Virus record (IMG/VR): IMGVR_UViG_3300027985_000918 | Coordinates: 62,001 to 126,000 of that record | Reading direction: 5' to 3' (one strand) | DNA length: 64,000 nucleotides | Notes under the pieces: generated by a model | Databases searched by the model: none | The model's input: only the letters and a program-made list of their open reading frames with translations | Told to the model about the DNA's origin: nothing | Position numbers and translations under genes: made by a program | Part shown: positions 9,745-62,375 of the stretch, piece after piece | How positions within the stretch are numbered: the first letter of the stretch is position 1 | How the letters are laid out: the number at the start of each line of letters is the position of its first letter

Positions 9745-10386
9745 TTACCTAACTTCCAGGAGGGAATCCAAGTTCACACGCTCATCGTCCTGGATGTGGA
9801 CGGGTTCACCATCTTTCAGCACCCAACCGTACTCTAGGGGGGCCAGCCCCAACAGGGGCTGGCCCTTCCTCAAGACAGGACCTTCCAGTCCTTCTCTGCA
9901 CTTCACATAGTAGGCCAATGAGGCGGGGACCGGGATGTAAGTCTCCGAGAGACCACTGTTCTCACACCACTTGGAGATGGGGGTGTTCATGAAGCGGAGG
10001 ACCGCAGTGTGGGGTACCACAATCGCCCACTCCCACCGATGATCGAAAAGGACATACACACACCCCCGGGAGAGATCCCCCGCCTCAATGGCTTTCCTCT
10101 GCTCGATGTGGATGGTGTCGAAACTGAAGTTGCCGTCCGTCCAGGAGTCCCTCCACTTCGAGTCGTCCATCCCCTTGCGGGCCAGCTCTACCCCATATGT
10201 CCCGTCGAGAGATAGCAGGTCGATGCCGTAGCGGTCGGGATTGTCACGAAGCTGGATGCGGTCGAGCCCGAAGATCTCTTTGACCGCCTTCCGCAACTGC
10301 GGGGAATCCGCATAGGCCCTCCGAGCCTGAGGGTCGTTGGTCCGGAAGGCCGAGTCCTCGAACCTCTTGTTCTGGTGGATCTTCAC
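9745..10386 (-). CDS. putative PD-(D/E)xK-like nuclease
   Basis: DNPDRYGIDLLS...VELARK...W...FDTIHIEQRK resembles restriction-endonuclease-fold phage proteins. Confidence 0.5.
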   Translation of the reverse strand: MKIHQNKRFEDSAFRTNDPQARRAYADSPQLRKAVKEIFGLDRIQLRDNPDRYGIDLLSLDGTYGVELARKGMDDSKWRDSWTDGNFSFDTIHIEQRKAIEAGDLSRGCVYVLFDHRWEWAIVVPHTAVLRFMNTPISKWCENSGLSETYIPVPASLAYYVKCREGLEGPVLRKGQPLLGLAPLEYGWVLKDGEPVHIQDDERVNLDSLLEVR

Positions 10387-11057
10387 TCCACTGGCTCCAG
10401 CCGAACCCGTAGGACCACCCGGTGAGTCCAGGAATGCTCCGCCTCGTCTGTCTCGTGATAGAACCGCAGGTCGAACGGACGATTGGTCACCGGGTACGAC
10501 AGGTACTGGGAGGACAGATCCATGGTGAGCGTCTCCCCACAGTGAGGGCAGTCACTGGTGACAGTGATGGGGAGGTAGGTCCTCTTGGACAGTTCGATCT
10601 CCCCGTCGTTGTTCTCGATGGCCACCTTGGGACTCAACTCGTCTCGGATTCGCATCAAGATCTCCCCAAGCTGGTTACGCCCTACCCCAGTGGAGAGGTC
10701 CACCCCCCAGTACAGATCCCCCCAAGTATTGCCCTCCCGCAACTCCCGAGACCCTGTCGCCAGCAGAGCCTCACCTAGGTCCGGGTGCTGGGTGAACTTG
10801 GCCTTGCACACCTCGTACATGACCTGGGCCTTGATGTCCTCCCAGTCCGGCCGGAGGGTGCAGCGCCTCCCATTATGCTTGGACTCTTGGCAGGTTGCCG
10901 AGTTGCGGATCAGCTCATGCTCCGCCTCGATGACGGTCTTGGCAGCCTGGAAGGCATGCTCCGTTGAAGGGTAGGTTTTCCCGTTCCACTCGATAGGGGC
11001 TTCCCAGAAGTTGGAGAGCCAGCGGGTCGGGCCACGAAACTCGTTGATAGGCTTCAT
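10383..11057 (-). CDS. NADAR (YbiA-like) domain protein with C-terminal extension
   Basis: LSNF, YPSTEHAFQAAK, KFTQHPDL, LLATG, EGNTWGDLYWG, GRNQLGEILMRIR. Confidence 0.9.
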   Translation of the reverse strand: MKPINEFRGPTRWLSNFWEAPIEWNGKTYPSTEHAFQAAKTVIEAEHELIRNSATCQESKHNGRRCTLRPDWEDIKAQVMYEVCKAKFTQHPDLGEALLATGSRELREGNTWGDLYWGVDLSTGVGRNQLGEILMRIRDELSPKVAIENNDGEIELSKRTYLPITVTSDCPHCGETLTMDLSSQYLSYPVTNRPFDLRFYHETDEAEHSWTHRVVLRVRLEPVE

Positions 11058-11655: not shown

Positions 11656-12034
11656 GAATGAACCTCATCTTGGCGGCATCACCGTCGGTGACCCAAAACC
11701 GAACCCCCAACGGAATCCACTCGAACCTCAGACCCGGGAACCTTCTCCGAGGGACATCGTGGGTGAACTTCACACCCGAACCCCCCGTGTACCTGTCGAT
11801 GAACCGTAGCCTAGCCCCCTGGAACAAGGTGGTGTCCCGGTAGTCCCGCCACCGCACCAACGCCGGCCAATACACCGCCGGAGATGCCGTAGACCCCCTC
11901 AAGGCCTGAAGGACAGGCGGAGGCTCCATATCGAACATCTCAGCCATCCGCCGATTCCCCTTGCACAGGTAGAGCTTGAACTCCCACGGACGGGTTAGGC
12001 GGACTAAGACGCCCGGCTGAGGTTCAATCGCCAC
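11606..12034 (-). CDS. hypothetical protein
   Basis: 142-aa ORF, motif at 12117-12142. Confidence 0.6.
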   Translation of the reverse strand: MAIEPQPGVLVRLTRPWEFKLYLCKGNRRMAEMFDMEPPPVLQALRGSTASPAVYWPALVRWRDYRDTTLFQGARLRFIDRYTGGSGVKFTHDVPRRRFPGLRFEWIPLGVRFWVTDGDAAKMRFIHETLQHHPGGHGLRTP

Positions 12035-12149
12035 TGGGGGGCTCGTCCCACTGGGTCTTGTGCCATTCCGACCGGGACTGGTTCACAGAAAGAACTCCTC
12101 TGGAGGTACTGGAGAGATACTCGAATCTGCGTGGGTGTTACCCGGGGAC

Positions 12150-12655
12150 CCGGCGACGGAGCCCACTTGTTAGGGGTTCAGAGGATCAGAGGACTGGCTC
12201 AACCGAGAGGGGTCTATCACCCCTGATAGCGGGGAGGCCCCCGCTACCCTATCAGCCAGCCCCGTCGCCGGGATCCGGTGCCTGTCGCACATTGAGGCCC
12301 CTGCCGGCAGCCGCAGAGGTAGGAGGTCCCCCGCTTTATGAGCCCCCGGGTGAGAGGAGCAGCACCCGAGGACACAAAGCGGAGGGGGTCGGGGGGCACA
12401 TGTGCGAGGTGCTGAGTACCAGCCTGTTGGACACAGGAACAACAGGCCCTACCCTGGGAGGTCTTGCGTGGACCTCTACCAGATACCCCTGACCGATGCA
12501 AAACGGGATCACCCGTAGTTCTTCTTGCTCAAGACGGCGGAGATGCTACCCCCACCCTTATTTCTCAGAGGGGTTGCGGCCGGGACCCTTGGGTGATCCA
12601 TTCTACCCGGGGCCCGGCCGCAATGGGTACTTCGCCTTATCCGTGTTCTGGGGGC
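12150..12655. ncRNA. candidate structured non-coding RNA
   Basis: No credible ORF; multiple hairpins and crossing helices (see findings). Confidence 0.4.
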
Positions 12656-12662
12656 CGCAGCC

Positions 12663-16632: not shown

Positions 16633-16757
16633 CCTCGGTCCTCCTTCGCTGTACACACCCCCTACTTGGCTGACCTAAGGGGGTTACCTTCAGGAGCGAA
16701 AAATTAATCCGGCGAAAAATGCGGGTCCGACGGGATGCCAAAAGAAAACGAAGAGTT

Positions 16758-17024: not shown

Positions 17025-17250
17025 CGGATCGTCCTCTGGGGAGAAAACCCCGCTGGAATAGGGCTCGGGGAGTCGTTTTTGGGGGGGATGGGCACATCGC
17101 TACCCCCAAAGCAGACGCCCCCTGTGAGAGAAACTACCCTTCTCAGCGTTGATCCGAACCCTGTTGCCTTCGACAATGTCATTTTGGGTGCAGATTCAAT
17201 CCCCCGTCTGGAGGGCTGGCGGGGACCCGATCACCTTTTTTAAGCGGTTC

Positions 17251-17430
17251 TGGCACGGAGCTTGCACACACCCACCACCCCAGGTGGACACCCCGAGTCA
17301 CGGGGGGTGTGCAAGCTCCGTGCCACCCTTCAACAGGTAACCCAGGGCTTGCACCCCCACCCCCCTCAGGGTACACCCCAAGTATTGGTGGAGTGTGCAA
17401 GCCCTGGGCCACCCTTCAACAGGTAACCCA
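17251..17430. repeat. two long hairpins separated by a 23-bp direct repeat
   Basis: 19-bp perfect IR 17251-17269/17307-17325; 14-bp perfect IR 17341-17354/17395-17408; GCCACCCTTCAACAGGTAACCCA at 17322 and 17408. Confidence 0.85.
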
Positions 17431-17551
17431 CCAAAAGTTGTGCCAAGCTACTCTGTCCCGCAACTTGTTCCGTAGTACCTACTTGCGGAGCCCCTGAAGT
17501 TACCTCCCCCGGCGCTCCCAAGAACCCGTGGGGGGGCGCCGGGGGAGAGGC

Positions 17552-18232
17552 TCAGCTCCCGCTGGTCGGCAGGGGTACCGTCCTCGTGGGGTCCCACACC
17601 GTCACGCCGAGCCATTCCGCCGCCTCGTACCAGGCTGCCAGCTCGGCGGGGTGAAGGTCGCCGTACAGGTACACGGTCACGTCGAGGTCGGAGACGTCTT
17701 GCAAGACGCTCATGCAGGCCTCCGCACACAAGGTGTGCGGCACGCCGTAGGCCCCCGTGCTGAGGGCAGGCACGGCCAGGCTCTTGCAGCCCAAGAGCTG
17801 GGCCATGGTGACTGCCCCGCTGTAGCACGAGTACAGGGCGTCGACCACGTCGTCCTCGTCCTCGGTGACGCTCTCTCCCACACGCAGCACTTCCTCCCGC
17901 AGAGGGCTCATGATGGGCCCCACGGTGTTGAGGACCCAGCCCACGCTGAGCCCCGTGCCGGTGGCCGGTACCGGGCGCACCTGGCCTTGGGGGCAGCGGA
18001 GGGTCACGTACCTTTCTGATAGGGGTCCCTCGGGCAGGTTGTGGCTGCTTTCCCGATAGGGGTGCCGCACGCCAATCACCTCTTCACACCGCTTCCGAAG
18101 GATTGCTCCAGCCTTGCGGTGGATGGCTCCGTCGACCCCTCCTCCCCCCAGCATCTGAGGGTTGGCGGCGTTCAGCAGAGCGTCCCCCTTGAACTCGGAA
18201 ATGTCCCCAAGGACGATGGTCATGGCACTCAT
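17552..18232 (-). CDS. macrodomain protein (ADP-ribose hydrolase, YmdB/MacroD-like)
   Basis: GDISEFKGDALLNAANPQMLGGGGVDGAIHRKAG, VLNTVGP, SLAVPALSTGAYG; motif at 18346-18372. Confidence 0.9.
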   Translation of the reverse strand: MSAMTIVLGDISEFKGDALLNAANPQMLGGGGVDGAIHRKAGAILRKRCEEVIGVRHPYRESSHNLPEGPLSERYVTLRCPQGQVRPVPATGTGLSVGWVLNTVGPIMSPLREEVLRVGESVTEDEDDVVDALYSCYSGAVTMAQLLGCKSLAVPALSTGAYGVPHTLCAEACMSVLQDVSDLDVTVYLYGDLHPAELAAWYEAAEWLGVTVWDPTRTVPLPTSGS

Positions 18233-18386
18233 ACAGGACCTCCAGGTCAATGCGGTACCGGATATACTGGGGAGTAGGGGACTGTTACCCCCTTTCCGGC
18301 AGCCTTGGGAAGAGGCACCGCTGGTCTCTGAGCCTTGCGACAAGCCTACTGGCGAAGAGTGAGGGGGTTACCTCCCCCAAGAACGA

Positions 18387-18423
18387 CAACCCCCGCTCTG
18401 AGGCGATCCCAGAGCGGGGGTTG
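18387..18423 (-). terminator. hairpin terminator closing candidate ncRNA
   Basis: CAACCCCCGCTCTG-loop-CAGAGCGGGGGTTG. Confidence 0.7.
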
Positions 18424-19157
18424 AAGGGTGTCCGGCGTAGCAGGTTGAACGACGAAGGAGGACACAACGCCGGGGCACCAGCGGACTTAGGTAGCTTCTT
18501 GACACCTTGAGGGAGAGCACGCCAGGCCACTCAGGGAACCTTTTCCGACTTCTTCGGATCCTGAGTCAACCCGTCCGCCTTGGCTTCGGGGGACTGCGCT
18601 GCGGTGGTCCTCGGTTTCCCGAGATCCCCCTTGTGGGGGTCCCCACCGTCTCGACCCAGCTCCGGGAGCTACCCGTATGCCTCTTGTCGTCCGTCGGCTC
18701 CATGTACCCCTGCCTCCTGCCCTCTCAGGCAGAGGCTCCAGGGTGTAGGTTAAGATGGCTCAGAGGGGGCTTCAAAAGCCCACTCTGCCCCGCTTCAGAC
18801 TTCCCTTCTGCTTGCGGGGACCGTCCGGTCGTGGTCTATGCTAGGTTGTGGCTTGGCTGACGTCGCCCACCTCTACCCGTGGGGCTCTGTAGGGCTCTCC
18901 AGTTCACCGCTCGTCACGGATCCCTAGGACTGGTCCCGGGAGGGGTCAGCTCCCGTCCCCGGTTACTGGCCGGTGGACCTGGCTCTTTGGTTCAAGCCAC
19001 CCTACATTGTGTTCAGTCTTCCGGCTGCTCCTGGGGGTCTCAGCTTTCGCTCTCCCAGGCCCTGCTCTGCCTTCTTATGAAGGCAGTCCAGACAAGCCTG
19101 CCGTGCTCTCTCTCAAGCTGTCAAAGAGTGTGTCGGGGGTCTGTTCCCCTTCCACGC
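18387..19157 (-). ncRNA. candidate large structured ncRNA (~750 nt)
   Basis: Own motif at 19163-19189, terminator at 18387-18423, no credible ORF, 26/29-bp terminal pairing, internal hairpins. Confidence 0.6.
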
Positions 19158-19205
19158 TATAGCTACTCGAACCCGGGGGTGTTGTTACCACCCCACTAGC
19201 ACTTT

Positions 19206-19865
19206 TCAGCCGGCTTGGGAGGTCAATCGAAGCCGGTTGGGGGTCACCGCCTTGGCCCTCCAGTGCTTGTCCCCCACGGGAACGTGGTTGGCTCGGACGA
19301 ACTTGGCCACCTTGCGAGGGAACTCGGCGTACCGGAAGGACTCTGCCACCCGGACCACATAGCCCTCCTGCTCACCTCCGAGCCGGCTCACTCCCGAGAA
19401 ACACGCCTTCACGGCGTCTTCGTCCCAGGGGCCCTCGTACAGGGCTGGGGCGGTCTCCAGCCCCAGAAGGGCAGCCCACTCCATGGTCTCTTCCCAGGAC
19501 AGGCAGCGGTCCTCTTCGTCGTACATGGCGAACACGTAGAAGTAGCTGCCCAGAGCATCGTAGTGGATGCTGTGCTGGGCGAAGAGGTTCTCGCCGCAGA
19601 CCCGCCACCCCTTAGGGAGGTCGGGCGCTACGCTAGCTGCCAGCGCTCTTACCCAGTTCTGGCTCTCATGGGCCCGACCATCCACGGAACGGGCATGCAG
19701 GTACCCGTCTGGGTAGATGGTGGTGTTCTCTCCGTCCAGTTTCTCGGTCACCAGGACACGCTCGCCCTGGAAGTGTTCCACGTCCGAGAGGGTCTTGTCG
19801 TCGTCAGTAGCCCCAGGGGACCACGGAAGGTGGAACGTGCGGGGGTACTTGGTTCGAGGTTCCAT
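19206..19865 (-). CDS. ATP-dependent RNA ligase family protein
   Basis: KYPRTFHLPWSPG, VTEKLDGENTT (KxDG motif I), GENLFA, EGYVVR, KFVR; motif at 19899-19924. Confidence 0.9.
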   Translation of the reverse strand: MEPRTKYPRTFHLPWSPGATDDDKTLSDVEHFQGERVLVTEKLDGENTTIYPDGYLHARSVDGRAHESQNWVRALAASVAPDLPKGWRVCGENLFAQHSIHYDALGSYFYVFAMYDEEDRCLSWEETMEWAALLGLETAPALYEGPWDEDAVKACFSGVSRLGGEQEGYVVRVAESFRYAEFPRKVAKFVRANHVPVGDKHWRAKAVTPNRLRLTSQAG

Positions 19866-19939
19866 GACACACCTACCAGTTAGGATCGTTCCCCGCACCT
19901 ACTAATGACTCCCCTGCTGTTACCACCCGCCAAGTAGGA

Positions 19940-20094: not shown

Positions 20095-20194
20095 CCTTTG
20101 GGCCGGGTAACCTCCGACGTCTGTAGGTGAGGAGTCGGGTCCAGCCGCCAGGCTACCCCCGTTGGGATGGCCTTCCCTGCTCCTTACGCTCCAC

Positions 20195-20773
20195 CTACTG
20201 GTCAGGGGACAGGCGGTTACCTCGAAAATTGGGGGTAACACCCCCACACATGGCCAGTAGCCACCCCGTAAGGACCACCCCACCCCCCACCCCCGGCGGA
20301 TGCCGCCCCTTGCACCCTACCTACTTGTCAAGAGGGGCCTTGTTACCTTGAAAACTGGGGGTAACACCCCCACACATGGCCAGTAGCTACCCCGTAAGGA
20401 CCACTCCGAAGGCGGGGAGGGGCGGCATCCGCCCCTTGCACCCTATCTACTTGTCAAGAGGGGCCTTGTTACCTCGAAAATTGGGGGTAACAACCCCGCC
20501 CCTGCCGAGTAGTCTAGGAGTAAGGGGCGCCCCATAGGGAAACCGATGCGCCGCCCCCCATCCTGCCCCTTGCATTCCCTCTACTTGTCAAGGGGCAGGT
20601 GGTTACCTCGAAAATTGGGGGTAACACCCCCACACATGGCCAGTAGATACCCCGTAAGGACCACCCACGAAGGACCATCTACCCCGCACCCACTCCCTAC
20701 GCCCTATCTACTGGTCAATGAACAGGCTGTTACCTCGAAGATAGAGGGTAACACGGGTACCTCCGGCGAGTAG
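20195..20773. repeat. five tandem ~126-bp units, each with a 66-bp symmetric double promoter-like core
   Basis: CTACT-N16-GTTACC-N12-GGTAAC-N16-AGTAG starting at 20195, 20321, 20447, 20581, 20708. Confidence 0.9.
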
Positions 20774-20913
20774 ACCAGACGTAAGGAGCGTTCACCCCTT
20801 CGACTGCTGAGAGCGGGGTAACTTCGACCGGCAGATGAGTAGGTGTTTCGTAAGGAGTGACCTTGTGCTTTTCCTATTGGGGAGGGAGGAACCCCCCTCC
20901 CTGAGGGCCCCAG

Positions 20914-21244: not shown

Positions 21245-21610
21245 AACTTCGACCCCCACAACTCGAAACTTTGCCCTTCCGAAACTTTCAAGCCGAAACT
21301 TTCATCAAAGTTTCGGCAACTTGGCGGAAGTTTCGAGCTGGGGAGGTAACTAAGGCCTCTTGCCAAGTAGACACGGGGAACTTTGGAGAACCGCCACTAT
21401 GAAGGTCCCCAAGCCCGTTCCGGGATACCCGCTCACCTTGGAGTGCGGAGGCCCCCACCGATTCGAGTGGGGGCCTGGGGAAGCATGAACTTCGGCACCT
21501 AGAAGCCCTTTGAAAGTTTCAAAGGGCGCCCTAACGCCAAACTTTGAGTGTAGAAGTGCTCTTGAAAGTTTCGAGGACACTTCGGCACGCAAACTTTCGC
21601 AACTTTTCTG
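21245..21610. repeat. clusters of AAAGTTTC/GAAACTTT motifs
   Basis: Repeated in both orientations at 21245-21335 and 21490-21610. Confidence 0.75.
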
Positions 21611-22570: not shown

Positions 22571-22688
22571 AAACTTCCAAAGTTTCGACTTGAAAGTTTC
22601 GGGGGAGCGAAGTTTCGACTTGTGAGGGTCGAAGTTTCGACTTGAAAGTTTCGGGGGAGCAAAGTTTCGACTTGTGAGGGTCGAAGTT
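22571..22688. repeat. tandem AAGTTTCG array
   Basis: About 8 copies, incl. duplicated ~44-bp block, abutting motif at 22690-22715. Confidence 0.85.
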
Positions 22689-22744
22689 AGGTAACAGAGG
22701 GGGAGTGGCGAGTAGGTCCTTCAGAACGGAAGGAGGACACCACA

Positions 22745-23020: not shown

Positions 23021-24136
23021 CTCCCCCTGCCACTGCCGGGCCTGTTCCCTCAGGTAGGTCAGGCCCCGGCTCACCGACGCTCTCGAAACCCCCAACTGCT
23101 CTGCGATCTCCGACCGAGTCATCCCAGCCGACACCATCGGGAGAATGGCTACCGCCATCTTCCCATCCTGCGTGTGGGACTTCTCCGACTCCCCCAGCCA
23201 CACCGTCAACGCCTCTTGGGCCTCCGCCATACCCTGGGCTTCCTCTGCCCCTGAGGGCTCCGCAGGGATGGTCTGACTGGAGGCCACGTCCATCAACCCA
23301 TAATCCCCGTCACCCCCATACCCCATCACCCCAGGGGACTCGAACTCCTTCCGGCGCTTCTGCTTCCGGTGGTAGTTGCTCAGGACCCCCTGACACACCA
23401 TGTGGACGTAGTGCCCGAAGGAGGACTTGCGGGCATCCCAAGGGCAGTGACCCTCATTCCGGGCCAGCAGACCTTTGTAGACCTCTTGGAGCACATCATC
23501 CGGGTCGTAACGGGCGGAGAAGATCCACTGCCCGAACCCAGCGAACAGCAACTTGGCGACCTCCTCCGCCCTGTTCACCAGATCGATCCCTAGCTCCGGG
23601 TTGTCGTCCAGTACCCCCTCGGCTACCACCAAGGCGGCCTGAGCGGCGTTCACCGATTCGGGGATCACGGTAACCAGAGCCTGCTCGCCAGTAGGCTCCA
23701 CGTAAGCCCCGCCCCTCTTACGGGGGGACTCCGTACCACGAGGGGTAACGCTGGCCGACTTCCGAGTAGCTGGGGTGTTGGGAGTCTGAGCCACACCGAA
23801 CTCGATCATGAGGTCGAGTCCAGGCTCACCCTTCGAGGCTGCCGGAGCGTGGCGGCCAATGCGGAAGTACCGCTCGAAGGTCCAATGACGATCGTGCCCG
23901 GTCAGGGCTAGGAGGAGCTGCCTCTTGGACGTGTAGACGACATGATCCCCCTCGGGAAGCACCAACACCAGGTGCTGGGGTGACCTAACCACCACCTCGT
24001 GGCTTCCGTCCATGTGACGGGCCCGAAGGCGAAGGGTCTCGCTGCTGTCAAGCGAGATCGACGCCGGGGTTCGCTTTTCTTCGGCGGAGGGTTCGATGTC
24101 AGTCTGGGGGCGGGTTTGATTTTTCGAGGGTTGCAA
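23015..24136 (-). CDS. ECF-like RNA polymerase sigma factor with N-terminal extension
   Basis: YDPDDVLQEVYKGLL...FGHYVHMVCQGVLSNYHRKQKRR (region 2), MTRSEIAEQLGVSRASVSRGLTYLRE (region 4 HTH); TTG 24136 follows GGAGGGAGG. Confidence 0.8.
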   Translation of the reverse strand: MQPSKNQTRPQTDIEPSAEEKRTPASISLDSSETLRLRARHMDGSHEVVVRSPQHLVLVLPEGDHVVYTSKRQLLLALTGHDRHWTFERYFRIGRHAPAASKGEPGLDLMIEFGVAQTPNTPATRKSASVTPRGTESPRKRGGAYVEPTGEQALVTVIPESVNAAQAALVVAEGVLDDNPELGIDLVNRAEEVAKLLFAGFGQWIFSARYDPDDVLQEVYKGLLARNEGHCPWDARKSSFGHYVHMVCQGVLSNYHRKQKRRKEFESPGVMGYGGDGDYGLMDVASSQTIPAEPSGAEEAQGMAEAQEALTVWLGESEKSHTQDGKMAVAILPMVSAGMTRSEIAEQLGVSRASVSRGLTYLREQARQWQGEL

Positions 24137-24189
24137 GTTACGTCCTCCCTCCGTACATCGGGATGTGCCGGAAGTTTCATCGTCCCGCA

Positions 24190-24218
24190 CTTCTACCACT
24201 TTCAGCCCCCAAGTGCAA
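24190..24218 (-). promoter_or_regulatory. possible host sigma70-type promoter of the sigma gene
   Basis: TTGCAC-N17-TAGAAG on minus strand. Confidence 0.4.
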
Positions 24219-24493
24219 GGAAACAGTAGGGCATCCCGCCCCCAAACGGGCGGGTCAACCCCCCTTCATAGCCCTAAAGTTCTGCAGGGGGAGTTTGGCT
24301 AAGGCCAGAACCGAAACTTTGGGGTGAACTTCGATGGTCTCAAAGTTTGCTGTGGGCTTCCCTGCCCCCTCGGAGAGGGGTGCCCTTCCCTCTCCAACCC
24401 CCCTTATCGAAGCAGCCCTCCAACTGGCTGTTGGCCCCCTTCAAGAGTGAGGAGTCAGCCGGCCGACCGAGTCCCGCCGTGTTGAAGAATCCA

Positions 24494-24519
24494 GGTAACC
24501 CGGACTCTCTTATGAGTAG
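24494..24519 (+). promoter_or_regulatory. phage promoter-like motif heading the paralog array
   Basis: GGTAAC-N15-AGTAG. Confidence 0.75.
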
Positions 24520-24564
24520 GCCTTTCAGGACGAAACCTCTTGTAAGTCCCAGAGGAGGCAACCC

Positions 24565-24950
24565 ATGAACACGAGTTAAGAACGGCATCGTGAGGCATTG
24601 AGAGGATGGGCCTGCTGTCGAGTGGTACCTCAACGGGAATCGGCATGAGTGAGGCGCCCCAGCCATTGAGGGGCCTAAACGGACTCAATGGCTGGGGCTG
24701 TGGGACGGACTCAATGGCTGGGGCTGTGGGATCGATCCCACACCGAGGTGATTCGGGAGGCAGCCATGAACATCTGGTAGGTCCAACACCAAAGGTTATA
24801 AAATCCCTGCTGGGCCGTTCGGGCCGTTGAAGGTGGTGGTTCTGAGGCCAGCTCCACCGTGAAGGCCCCCGGTTACGAGGGTGCCGACAGCTTCAAAGCG
24901 TGGTGGTCCCCTGGGGTCTGCACCCGAATCGAGGAGAAATCTGGCCGATG
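24565..24950 (+). pseudogene. decayed HREDGPA-repeat gene remnant(s)
   Basis: Fragments equivalent to EDGPAVEW, IDPTPEVIREAA, QLHREG, CTRIEE with stops/frameshifts; 26-bp tandem duplication 24679-24730. Confidence 0.75.
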
Positions 24951-25577
24951 ATCACCGTACCGACCTTGAAAACCCTCAATGCCTGCTCGGACCAGGTGAC
25001 TCTTTTCGAGTCCTTTTTGGGGGATCGAGAAGGTGTTGATCCCACGCCGGATGTGATCCGGGAAGCAGCCCTGTCCGGCCTAGATGTGAAGTGGGCTCAG
25101 GCTCGGGGGTTGCTCACGATCCCCGACGGGAAGATCACGTACAAAGACAGCCGCAAAGAGTGGTACCTCGATGGGAACCTCCATCGGGAGGATGGCCCCG
25201 CTGTTGAGGGGGCCGACGGAACCCAGGAGTGGTGGCTCAACGGGCAGCTCCATCGGAAGGATGGGCCTGCTGTCGTGCGGTCCGACGGCCGCAGGTTGTG
25301 GTGGCTCTACTGGAAACTCCACCGAGAGGATGGGCCTGCTGTCGAGGGGGCCGATGGTCACCAAGAGTGGTGGGTCAACGGGAAACGCCACCGGGAGGAT
25401 GGGCCGGCGATCGAGTGGGCCAAAGGCTACAAAGAGTGGTACCGCAACGGGAAGCGGCACCGAGAGGACGGACCTGCGATCGAGTGGCCCGACGGCTCCA
25501 AGGAGTGGTACCACAACGGGAAATTCCACCGAGAGGATGGCCCTGCTTTCGAGGGGCCCGACGTCACCCGGTCGTAG
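24948..25577 (+). CDS. HREDGPA-repeat protein 1 (6 repeats, premature stop)
   Basis: N-domain + repeats; TAG TGA where paralogs have TGG TGG. Confidence 0.85.
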   Translation: MITVPTLKTLNACSDQVTLFESFLGDREGVDPTPDVIREAALSGLDVKWAQARGLLTIPDGKITYKDSRKEWYLDGNLHREDGPAVEGADGTQEWWLNGQLHRKDGPAVVRSDGRRLWWLYWKLHREDGPAVEGADGHQEWWVNGKRHREDGPAIEWAKGYKEWYRNGKRHREDGPAIEWPDGSKEWYHNGKFHREDGPAFEGPDVTRS

Positions 25578-61394: not shown

Positions 61395-62375
61395 CTACCC
61401 GAAGAACTTGTCGGCGTCTTCGTACTGGAAACCACAGCGTTCTGCGAACGTCTGGTCGGTCTGCATGTCACCGACCACGATGACCTTGGAGGGGTCGAGA
61501 CGGTACCGTTCGAGGAACACGACTCCCATGCCGGGACAGGGCTTCCTCCAAAAAGACTGAGGCACTCCTGCCCTCTCGGGGGCGTAGGCCACGTCCATGT
61601 CAGGCTGGCCGAGCTGTTCCAGGGTCTCTTCGATGCACTCGATGACCGTGGACTCGGAAACGTACCTATAGTCGTTGGCCGGGCGGCTAGTCCCGGATTG
61701 GTTGGTAGCCCCCAGGAGGAGGTACCCCTGGGCCTTGAGGTCGGCCAGGCGGGACTTCCGGCCCGGCAGGATCTTCACGTCAGCCGGATGGCGGGGGTAG
61801 ATCTCCCCACTCCGAGTACCCCTTAGGGTGCCGTCGAGATCGAAGATCACGGCCTTGGCCGTGTACTCTGGGCCGAGCTTGATCTCGACATCGACTCTCT
61901 CGACGGAGTCGAACCCCTCATCCGTGGTGGGGGGCTCGAACCGCTTGAAGTAGGCGAACTGGGCGGCTGGGGGGAACATGCTGGGGTTCCCTTTGACTGC
62001 CGGGTCCTTGTAGTCGTCCGGCGTCAGCAGTCGGCCGTAGTGGCGGACCTGACGGAGGCTCGCCAGGAACTGGACCTGGCCGAGATCGGCATTCAGCCAG
62101 ATGACCCGGATGGGCAGGCCCAGTTCCTTGGCGATGGCGACCGCAGCCATCCTCGACTCCTTCGTGCCGAATGTGTTGTCGAGGACAAACTTGCGGTGTC
62201 CTTCCCCGTACTTCTCCCGTAGGGATTGGTAGATGGGGGCTCCGGCCATGCCCAGAGAACCACCGAGGCTGTCTCGGTTGAGACGGCAGTAGCCCTGCTC
62301 CACCAGGGACTTGCTGTAGGTGGTCTTCCCGCAGGCGGGAGGGCCCATAACGAGAACGATCTCACCATTGAACAT
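61395..62375 (-). CDS. polynucleotide kinase / HAD 3'-phosphatase (PNKP-like)
   Basis: GPPACGKTT, NRDSLG, VLDNT kinase; DLDGTL, TNQSG, RKPCPGM, VGD HAD-IIIA phosphatase. Confidence 0.85.
   Translation of the reverse strand: MFNGEIVLVMGPPACGKTTYSKSLVEQGYCRLNRDSLGGSLGMAGAPIYQSLREKYGEGHRKFVLDNTFGTKESRMAAVAIAKELGLPIRVIWLNADLGQVQFLASLRQVRHYGRLLTPDDYKDPAVKGNPSMFPPAAQFAYFKRFEPPTTDEGFDSVERVDVEIKLGPEYTAKAVIFDLDGTLRGTRSGEIYPRHPADVKILPGRKSRLADLKAQGYLLLGATNQSGTSRPANDYRYVSESTVIECIEETLEQLGQPDMDVAYAPERAGVPQSFWRKPCPGMGVVFLERYRLDPSKVIVVGDMQTDQTFAERCGFQYEDADKFFG

What the first reader, a model, noticed from the sequence alone, without database searches (positions are those of the whole stretch)
18387..19189. 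Candidate novel ~750-nt large structured ncRNA with its own promoter and terminator
Seen: minus-strand phage motif at 19163-19189, strong hairpin at 18387-18423, no credible ORF between. The ends pair: 19096-19124 and 18499-18527 form a 26/29-bp inverted repeat enclosing ~570 nt. Minus-strand interior has many stems: AGC-GAAA-GCT, CTCGG-GAAA-CCGAG, CCCCC-ACAA-GGGGG, TCCGA-AGAAG-TCGGA nested in ACTCAGG...CCTGAGT. Known: giant ornate RNAs (GOLLD, ROOL, OLE) are of this size and some occur in phages; I could not match it to them, RNase P, tmRNA or group I/II introns by eye. Its position between RNA ligase and macrodomain genes is suggestive only.
Basis: partly seen in the sequence, partly recalled or inferred. 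Interest (0 to 1): 0.85.

Follow-up and report, generated by a model that had tools for sequence, protein, structure and literature searches.

The report
Jumbo-phage noncoding RNA with variable insert
This is a real, previously uncatalogued non-coding RNA gene of a 402-kb phage, but only its two ends are conserved in related phages, so the 566-nt middle that made it look like a giant ornate RNA is a lineage-specific insert with no proven fold.

Summary
The described features are all present on the minus strand: a phage promoter motif (19189-19163), a 16-bp terminator hairpin (18423-18387), no coding signal in between, and a 26/29 inverted repeat enclosing about 570 nt. No Rfam family matches. 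GenBank phages, IMG/VR, JGI metagenome contigs and GTDB genomes yielded no relative.

Two homologues turned up next to relatives of the macro-domain gene, L011 (409 nt) and L015 (226 nt). They share four things with the window RNA: the promoter, the base of the clamp helix, a 3' motif UCCUCCUU(C/U)G(U/G)CGU(U)C(A/G)ACC, and a terminator. The clamp encloses only about 130 nt and about 67-80 nt in them, so the large domain is not a family property.

On its own the 566-nt domain folds no better than ordinary windows of this genome (z -2.25; background -1.4 +/- 1.4).

My best reading is a new small family of phage regulatory RNAs. Its conserved C/U-rich, anti-Shine-Dalgarno-like 3' loop pairs with the leader and ribosome-binding sites of phage early mRNAs. 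The complementarity exceeds flank-shuffled controls (P about 0.01). A roughly 30-bp clamp helix holds a variable insert.

The mechanism is inferred, not shown. Interest is moderate.

The parts
19163..19189 (-). Phage promoter motif GGTAAC-N15-GAGTAG. The transcript probably starts within a few nt downstream, around 19155-19162.
   Evidence: Exact motif. The same motif class occurs 38 times in the window ahead of RBS and start codons. The L011 and L015 homologues start with the same motif.
19126..19162 (-). 5' leader with a local hairpin GGGG-AACAGA-CCCC (19149-19136). In the full-length fold it pairs instead with the flanks of the 3' motif (helix P0).
   Evidence: In the MFE and ensemble, the pairs 6-11/723-728, 17-24/710-716 and 29-34/697-702 have p = 0.94-0.99. 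L011 has an analogous hairpin (GGUGGG-GGCAGA-CCCACC) and an analogous P0 with p about 0.6.
19095..19125 (-). 5' strand of clamp helix P1 (UCUUUGACAGCUUGAGAGAGAGCACGGCAGGC).
   Evidence: Inverted repeat I1, with p = 0.8-1.0 in the ensemble. The 15-nt TCTTTGACAGCTTGA is identical in L011.
18529..19094 (-). Window-specific central domain of 566 nt: purine-rich, U-poor, with a string of mostly local hairpins in its 3' half. Function unknown, and absent from both homologues.
   Evidence: z = -2.25, within the genome background. It has the most extreme A>T skew of the window (A 0.25, T 0.12). It has no hits in Rfam, GenBank phages or any fetched locus.
18498..18528 (-). 3' strand of clamp helix P1 (GCCUGGCGUGCUCUCCCUCAAGGUGUCAAG).
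   Evidence: In the pair table against L011: 21 pairs unchanged, 1 double compensatory G-C to A-U, 2 window mismatches that are Watson-Crick pairs in L011, and a 2-nt shortening on both strands.
18443..18462 (-). Conserved 3' motif UCCUCCUUCGUCGUUCAACC: an anti-Shine-Dalgarno-like CCUCC core plus a stretch antisense to the leader. This is the putative seed.
   Evidence: It is unique in the window. It differs at 1 of 20 positions in L015, and at 3 positions plus 1 indel in L011. The CCUCCUU core has unpaired probability of at least 0.9 in the window RNA and about 0.8-0.9 in L015. Its complementarity to phage leaders exceeds flank-shuffled controls.
18379..18423 (-). Intrinsic terminator: a 16-bp stem with a 5-nt loop (18423-18387) and the tail UCGUUCUU.
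   Evidence: with p = 0.97. L011 and L015 end in 17-bp and 14-bp terminator hairpins of different sequence.

Best explanation
The locus is an independent non-coding RNA gene of about 780 nt in a 402-kb jumbo phage. It belongs to a small, uncatalogued family of phage RNAs.

**Conserved parts of the family**
1. A phage-specific promoter.
2. A short 5' hairpin.
3. A long clamp helix (P1, about 27-30 bp in two members).
4. A 3' hairpin or internal loop that displays UCCUCCUU followed by CGUCGUUC.
5. An intrinsic terminator.

The clamp encloses an insert of very different size in each phage (about 67-80, 130 and 566 nt).

**Proposed mechanism (inferred, not shown)**
The conserved 3' motif is the working part. 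It base-pairs in trans with the leader box and Shine-Dalgarno region (GAACG..GAAGGAGGAC) of phage early mRNAs made from the same promoter class. It may also pair with host RBSs. Pairing would block ribosome binding and shut those genes down as the RNA accumulates.

In the primary transcript the flanks of the motif are held by pairing with the RNA's own 5' leader. The roughly 30-bp clamp is a plausible RNase III site, whose cleavage would free a 3' fragment of about 130 nt carrying the seed and the terminator.

The 566-nt insert is a lineage-specific expansion whose role, if any, is unknown.
For: **Shown**
- The promoter and terminator are real, and the interval is non-coding.
- Two homologues were found through macro-gene relatives. 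In the whole window, the only significant BLAST matches of the L011 and L015 RNAs lie at the matching 5' and 3' ends of this unit (E = 5.5e-4 and 1e-3).
- The clamp helix is kept in L011 with 21 unchanged pairs, 1 double compensatory change, 2 repaired mismatches and a matched 2-nt shortening on both strands. The base of the helix, including its A.C mismatch, recurs in L015.
- The 3' motif is nearly invariant across phages whose macro proteins are only 51-59% identical.
- In the isolated 3' fragments the CCUCC core sits in a hairpin loop in L011 (9-bp stem, 10-nt loop) and in L015 (15-nt loop). It is mostly unpaired in the window RNA. RNAalifold proposes a common stem around it.

**Bearing on the mechanism**
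- The motif forms 10 bp, a 2-nt bulge, then 5 bp with the leaders at promoters 15444(-) and 22690(+). It forms 11 contiguous bp with the leader at 16688(-).
- Ten of 26 promoter-proximal leaders give a duplex of -20 kcal/mol or better. Versions of the motif with the CCUCC core kept and the flanks shuffled give 3.4 on average (P = 0.013). For the mean of the five best leaders, P = 0.007.
Against: - Only three family members exist, so every comparative statement rests on very few events.
- The target test was designed after the leaders had been seen, and it works only for the window phage. In L011 and L015 the few available leaders show no preference for their own motif.
- Genome-wide duplex scans give many coding-region sites of equal or better energy.
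- In L011 the CCUCC core is predicted to be partly paired (unpaired probability 0.3-0.5).
- Nothing shows that the RNA is made, processed by RNase III, or acts in trans.
- The model gives no role to the 566-nt insert, although its extreme base composition suggests some constraint.
Confidence: 0.33

Rival explanations
1. One reading: the whole ~780-nt transcript, including the 566-nt interior, is a large, specifically folded 'ornate' RNA of a new class. Its three-dimensional structure is its function, as in GOLLD, ROOL or OLE. It may be released or circularised by the adjacent RNA ligase.
For: - The size and phage origin fit, with its own promoter and terminator.
- A clamp helix closes the domain.
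- Several interior hairpins are predicted with p > 0.9.
- The interior has the most extreme purine-rich, U-poor composition of the window, and the 127-nt L011 interior has the same composition.
- No known family matches.
Against: - The interior is absent from both homologues.
- Its folding z (-2.25) lies inside the genome background.
- GNRA hairpins are not enriched.
- The first ~250 nt of the interior have poorly defined pairing (p = 0.2-0.5).
- No covariation data exist.
- The ligase is not syntenic in the homologues.
Confidence: 0.12
2. A decoy or sponge RNA. The CCUCCUU loop, with an upstream hairpin, imitates the 3' end of 16S rRNA, or the RNA titrates a host RNA-binding protein or defence effector. 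It would be part of the anti-defence early region.
For: - The neighbourhood holds NADAR, macro-domain, RNA ligase and Pnkp-like genes, which are typical counter-defence and repair functions.
- In the window RNA a 6-bp hairpin, a 6-nt linker and CCUCCUU resemble helix 45, the linker and the anti-SD of 16S rRNA. This resemblance rests on my own knowledge of 16S, not on a tool result.
- The variable insert could carry extra binding sites.
Against: The helix-45-like hairpin is not kept in L011 or L015. No candidate effector or partner protein was identified. No Rfam rRNA match was found.
Confidence: 0.1
3. A cis-acting leader or attenuator. The transcript is the long 5' untranslated region of the downstream operon (macro gene and neighbours), and the terminator is a regulated attenuator.
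For: In L015 no promoter motif lies between the RNA's terminator and the next genes, which start 15 nt after the T-tail. Alternative pairings around the motif are possible: CCGGCG/CGCCGG against GUGUCC/GGACAC.
Against: In the window and in L011 a full promoter motif follows the terminator directly, at 18372-18346 and at L011 1488. The downstream genes differ among the three phages.
Confidence: 0.1
4. Largely non-functional spacer. This would be a decayed gene cassette or junk insertion retained between a promoter and a terminator, with only incidental conservation at the ends.
For: The interior is unconserved and thermodynamically ordinary. This phage region contains several other promoter-driven non-coding stretches.
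Against: A 15-nt and a 20-nt block are nearly identical between phages whose proteins are only about 50% identical. The clamp helix is maintained. The interior composition differs strongly from coding sense strands, and no frame shows residual codon bias or protein similarity.
Confidence: 0.1
5. A DNA-level element: a miniature inverted-repeat transposable element or a replication/packaging site whose arms are the 29-bp repeats.
For: The 26/29 terminal-inverted-repeat-like arms are 568 bp apart. Each arm begins with TTGACA.
Against: - No target-site duplication flanks the arms.
- No second copy of either arm exists in the window.
- The arms are conserved at the same place in L011 around a different, shorter interior, with the promoter upstream and the motif downstream also conserved.
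- The cumulative GC skew shows no turning point here.
Confidence: 0.04
6. A small basic peptide is encoded. The 45-codon ORF at 18703-18566 (minus strand) has AGGAGG 9 nt upstream of its ATG.
For: The RBS-like AGGAGG and the ATG are present.
Against: The region shows no codon periodicity. The ORF has no family hit at E<=1. It is absent from L011 and L015. The peptide is low-complexity and rich in Arg, Gly, Pro and Thr.
Confidence: 0.03

Closest known systems
Large 'ornate' bacterial and phage RNAs (GOLLD, ROOL, OLE, raiA)
   Same: They are several hundred nucleotides long, non-coding, sometimes phage- or prophage-encoded, and transcribed as independent units.
   Different: There is no covariance-model match. 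Those families have a conserved multi-helix core with covariation. Here the large interior is missing from the homologues and folds no better than the genome background.
Base-pairing sRNAs that use C/U-rich loops to bind Shine-Dalgarno sequences (S. aureus RNAIII and RsaE, B. subtilis RoxS, actinobacterial 6C RNA); named from my own knowledge
   Same: A conserved, accessible CCUCC-type motif is presented in a hairpin or internal loop just upstream of an intrinsic terminator. It is complementary to the GGAGG ribosome-binding sites.
   Different: This RNA is phage-encoded. There is no sequence or CM similarity to those families. The motif extends into a phage-specific leader box. A clamp helix of about 30 bp carries an insert of up to 566 nt, which none of those sRNAs have.
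Phage and prophage regulatory RNAs (for example DicF, lambda OOP); named from my own knowledge
   Same: A virus-encoded RNA with its own promoter and terminator that is proposed to act by pairing with mRNA translation-initiation regions.
   Different: It is about ten times longer. It is predicted to address a whole class of leaders rather than a single gene. There is no homology.
RNase III processing stems (rRNA-operon stalks, T7 early-RNA sites); named from my own knowledge
   Same: A helix of 27-30 bp with a few conserved mismatches brackets a long RNA segment.
   Different: Cleavage is untested. The bracketed segment is not a conserved functional RNA.

Membership tests
Rfam large RNAs (GOLLD, ROOL, OLE, raiA, HEARO) and any other Rfam 15 family | Match to the family covariance model. 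| tested here: not met
   No match at gathering score in the whole window. At E<=10 in 18100-19500 there are only terminator-driven chance hits of 14-19 bits. L011 and L015 also give none.
Large ornate RNA as a kind | A large multi-helix core conserved, with covariation, among homologues. | tested here: not met
   The homologues enclose about 130 nt and about 67-80 nt instead of 566 nt. The interior matches nothing in any locus or collection searched.
Large ornate RNA as a kind | Folding stability clearly above the genomic background. | tested here: not met
   The interior has z = -2.25, against a background of -1.4 +/- 1.36 with minimum -4.3.
Group I/II introns, RNase P RNA, tmRNA, tRNA | Covariance-model or ARAGORN detection. 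| tested here: not met
Trans-acting anti-SD base-pairing sRNA | Independent promoter and intrinsic terminator, with no ORF. | tested here: met
Trans-acting anti-SD base-pairing sRNA | A conserved, single-stranded seed motif. | tested here: met
   The motif is kept in 3 of 3 members. Its core is unpaired with p of at least 0.9 (window), 0.8-0.9 (L015) and 0.3-0.5 (L011).
Trans-acting anti-SD base-pairing sRNA | Complementarity to target translation-initiation regions beyond chance. | tested here: inconclusive
   In the window phage P = 0.007-0.047 against flank-shuffled motifs. There is no cognate preference in L011 or L015, and many coding sites have equal energy.
Trans-acting anti-SD base-pairing sRNA | Demonstrated regulation of a target. 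| not testable with these tools
   This needs reporter or infection experiments.
RNase III substrate | A double helix of at least ~20 bp. | tested here: met
   26/29 in the window and about 25/27 in L011.
RNase III substrate | Cleavage by RNase III. | not testable with these tools
   This needs in vitro cleavage or 5'/3'-end mapping.
MITE / transposon | Terminal inverted repeats with a target-site duplication and multiple copies. | tested here: not met
   The inverted repeat is present, but there is no flanking duplication and no other copy in the window.
Cis-acting leader / attenuator | No promoter between the terminator and the regulated gene, with a conserved downstream gene. | tested here: not met
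   A promoter motif follows the terminator in the window (18372-18346) and in L011 (1488), but not in L015. The downstream genes differ.

The most novel reading that the evidence does not exclude
The clamp helix is a docking and processing module, and the 566-nt purine-rich interior is an autonomous folded 'cargo' RNA. RNase III cleavage of the clamp would release it with juxtaposed ends, and the neighbouring RNA ligase might then seal it. That would make a phage-made large structured or circular RNA of a new class, grafted onto a regulatory-RNA scaffold.
Probability: 0.08. Interest if true: 0.8.

Novelty: new variant of a known kind. Interest (0 to 1): 0.4.

Why it matters
Jumbo phages run their own transcription programmes, yet very few of their non-coding RNAs are known. 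This locus, together with several neighbouring promoter-driven non-coding units, suggests that this phage lineage uses RNA regulators aimed at its own early-gene leaders. That would be a simple way to time the early-to-middle switch.

The clamp-plus-variable-insert architecture also gives a natural series (about 67-80, 130 and 566 nt) for asking whether large RNA domains can be gained on a small functional scaffold.

For RNA-discovery pipelines it is a caution. In a 62% GC genome, a long inverted repeat plus a terminator can give an impressive folding z-score to an interior that is thermodynamically ordinary.

Tried and rejected
**Known RNA families.** Rfam at gathering score and at E<=10, and ARAGORN, found nothing relevant.

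**Sequence searches**
- GenBank phages by megablast and blastn, with the window RNA and with the L011 RNA: no match.
- Two IMG/VR pattern scans with the 3' and 5' motifs: only the source contig and chance hits.
- JGI metagenome scan with the 3' motif: 58 hits, all unrelated, mostly antisense to RBS regions or inside a conserved coding gene, and none with the promoter motif.
- GTDB genome scan with the 5' motif: 20 chance hits.

**Searches through neighbouring genes**
- RNA-ligase relatives (64-70% identity) sit in different contexts and have no RNA.
- An alignment of macro proteins against IMG/VR returned only the source contig.
- Relatives of the 106-aa gene (L111-L114, L118) lack both the promoter motif and the RNA.
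- Relatives of the 93-aa gene were too distant or on contigs too short to help.

**Other ideas rejected**
- Coding reading: a +-strand ORF interrupted by one stop (18507-18860 and 18879-19199), tested as separate pieces, and the 45-aa minus-strand ORF. None has codon bias or a family hit.
- GNRA-loop enrichment: not significant.
- Genome-wide target prediction by duplex energy: not discriminating.
- Cognate motif-leader covariation across phages: not seen.
- Y-RNA, retron and 6S analogies: no Rfam match to any of these families was found. No reverse-transcriptase or Ro (TROVE) domain turned up among the roughly 28 gene products scanned with Pfam. This was a partial scan of the window's genes, not a full one.

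No covariance model of the family was built. With three divergent members it would have added little.

Full report
**Source and setting.** The window is part of a 402,383-bp IMG/VR contig (UViG_3300028422_000919, with an identical copy in 3300027985), so it comes from a jumbo phage. Its proteins have only remote relatives among GenBank phages. The candidate lies on the minus strand between an RNA ligase gene (19898-19206, PF09414) and a macro-domain gene (18343/18229-17552, PF01661). Further genes in the window are a NADAR domain protein, a sigma/HTH-like protein and a Pnkp-like kinase-phosphatase. This is an early-region mix of counter-defence and RNA-repair functions.

**Checking the observation.**
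- The motif at 19189-19163 is one instance of GGAAC-type element GGTAAC-N14/15-RAGTAG. I found this element 38 times in the window, usually 20-45 nt ahead of an RBS and start codon, so it is this phage's own promoter.
- The hairpin at 18423-18387 is a 16-bp terminator-like stem followed by UCGUUCUU.
- The arms 19124-19096 and 18527-18499 pair 26/29. None of 200 dinucleotide shuffles exceeded 24/29.
- No frame shows the GC3-high, GC2-low signature of the flanking genes. The longest ORF pieces on both strands have no Pfam or PHROG match at E<=1. These included the +-strand ORF broken by one stop, searched as two pieces as the operators advised.

**Is the interior exceptionally structured?** The whole unit has a shuffle z-score of -4.5 to -4.75, so I calibrated it against this genome.
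- Thirty-eight control folds (19 positions x 2 strands) give z = -1.4 +/- 1.36, with coding windows down to -4.
- GC-adjusted raw MFE of the unit is only -1.5 sd from the genome trend.
- Without the clamp helix and terminator, the 566-nt interior has z = -2.25 on the minus strand and -2.59 on the plus strand. That is inside the background.
- Only one GNRA hairpin with a stem of at least 4 bp is present (P = 0.14).
- The first ~250 nt of the interior have ill-defined pairing (p = 0.2-0.5). The 3' half is a row of local hairpins.

The interior is nevertheless compositionally odd (A 0.25, U 0.12). It has the most extreme A>T skew of the 64 kb.

**Known families.** No Rfam 15 family matches at gathering score. 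At E<=10 there are only chance hits driven by the terminator. ARAGORN finds nothing.

**Homologues.**
- Direct DNA searches failed in GenBank phages.
- Close relatives of the ligase sit in unrelated contexts.
- The macro protein has only four close relatives among 5.8 billion clusters. Two of their contigs carry a related RNA.

*L011:1042-1476* has the promoter motif, a 5' hairpin and the identical 15-mer UCUUUGACAGCUUGA. It has a clamp helix of about 27 bp, a second long hairpin, the sequence ACCUAUAAG, the motif UUCCUCCUUUGGCGUCAACC and a 17-bp terminator.

*L015:997-1246* has a promoter very like the window's. It has a 5' hairpin, a short version of the clamp base with the same A.C mismatch, the motif UUCCUCCUUCGUCGUUCGACC and a terminator.

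Within the whole window, the only significant matches of these two RNAs fall at the corresponding 5' and 3' ends of the candidate (E = 5.5e-4 and 1e-3).

The clamp encloses 566 nt in the window RNA, about 130 nt in L011 and about 67-80 nt in L015.

In the clamp, the window RNA and L011 share 21 identical pairs. There is one double compensatory change, two window mismatches that are Watson-Crick pairs in L011, and a 2-nt shortening on both strands. This is modest but real support for a conserved helix.

All further hunts added no member: IMG/VR, JGI metagenome and GTDB pattern scans, and three more neighbouring proteins.

**What is conserved, and what it suggests.** The best-conserved block is UCCUCCUU(C/U)G(U/G)CGU(U)C(A/G)ACC, just upstream of the terminator.
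- Folded as isolated 3' fragments, L011 shows the CCUCC core in a 10-nt loop on a 9-bp stem, and L015 shows it in a 15-nt loop.
- In the full-length window RNA the core is unpaired (p of at least 0.9) inside an internal loop. The flanks of that loop pair with the RNA's own 5' leader.
- RNAalifold proposes a common stem around the core.

The motif is the antisense of this phage's early-gene leaders. These run G-UCCUCC-AGAACG-GAAGGAGGAC-N4-8-AUG.
- With the leaders at promoters 15444(-) and 22690(+) the motif forms 10 bp, a 2-nt bulge, then 5 bp.
- With the leader at 16688(-) it forms 11 contiguous bp.
- I kept the CCUCC core and shuffled only the flanks. The real motif then binds the 26 promoter-proximal leaders better than the controls: mean P = 0.047, top-five P = 0.007, and 10 leaders at or below -20 kcal/mol against 3.4 expected (P = 0.013).

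This test was devised after I had seen the leaders. It could not be reproduced in L011 or L015, which offer only 2-4 leaders each. A genome-wide duplex scan is not discriminating.

**Interpretation.**
- *Firm:* this is a real, uncatalogued phage non-coding RNA gene. It belongs to a small family whose conserved core is the two ends plus the clamp base.
- *Inferred, about one chance in three:* it is a trans-acting riboregulator whose anti-SD, anti-leader loop represses translation of the phage's early transcripts. The clamp would be a probable RNase III site that liberates the seed-bearing 3' fragment.
- *Not supported at present:* a giant ornate structured RNA. The large interior is lineage-specific and thermodynamically ordinary. 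It cannot be excluded either, because its composition is unusual and no homologue exists to test covariation.
- *Ligase circularisation:* there is no comparative support, because neither homologue has a ligase nearby.
- *Rivals:* decoy or sponge, cis leader, decayed spacer, DNA element and small peptide are weighed in the rival list.

**Limits.**
- Three sequences from uncultured phages.
- No expression data.
- The host is unknown.
- The remaining 338 kb of the contig was not available for a paralogue search.

Noticed in passing
window 20176-20850: Five to six tandem units of about 126 nt. Each carries the phage promoter motif on both strands and a hairpin plus T-tail on the minus strand, and none shows coding periodicity. 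This looks like an array of convergent small sense and antisense RNAs. The minus-strand units carry GGUCCUUACGGGG (anti-SD-like) and the plus-strand units carry CGUAAGGA(G/C) (SD-like).
   Followed up: partly
window 17025-17504 (minus strand): A second promoter-driven stretch of about 450 nt between the macro gene and the next gene. It contains two copies of a 41-nt repeat and has no coding signal.
   Followed up: no
window 21250-21345 and 22580-22685; L015 150-250; L011 2560-2700: Clusters of the palindrome GAAAGTTTC (and CGAAACTTT variants) lie directly upstream of promoter motifs and are conserved in position in the related phages. They are probably operator sites for a phage repressor or activator.
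   Followed up: no
window, about 26 promoter-proximal leaders (e.g. 15418-15393, 22716-22744): Many transcripts start with a 5' hairpin in which GUCCUCC pairs with the gene's own GGAGGAC Shine-Dalgarno. They share an AGAACG(A) box at about +8, so translation of this gene class may be gated by leader structure.
   Followed up: partly
L008 1500-2110: In a related RNA-ligase locus, the first ~15 codons of the ligase are duplicated and an HNH-endonuclease-like ORF sits between the copies. This looks like a homing-endonuclease insertion at the 5' end of the ligase gene.
   Followed up: no
L112 1180-1660: An unrelated phage contig holds a non-coding region of about 500 nt behind a sigma-70-like promoter. 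It has a tRNA T-arm-like GGGTTCGATCCCC near its 3' end, and neither Rfam nor ARAGORN matches it.
   Followed up: partly
window 10383-11057, 17552-18229, 19206-19898, 61395-62375: NADAR, macro-domain, RNA ligase and Pnkp-like genes occur in one window. Together they form a toolkit for reversing ADP-ribosylation and repairing RNA, typical of counter-defence.
   Followed up: partly
window 24900-47555 (plus strand): At least six paralogous genes carry a weak DUF6745 signature and are linked by the recurring junction CGAACTGAGGAGGG before each start codon. This is a tandem gene family with translational coupling.
   Followed up: no
window 11851-12660 and 23941-25050: Further stretches of 0.8-1.1 kb lack codon periodicity. 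The second contains promoter motifs at 23669, 23744 and 24494.
   Followed up: no
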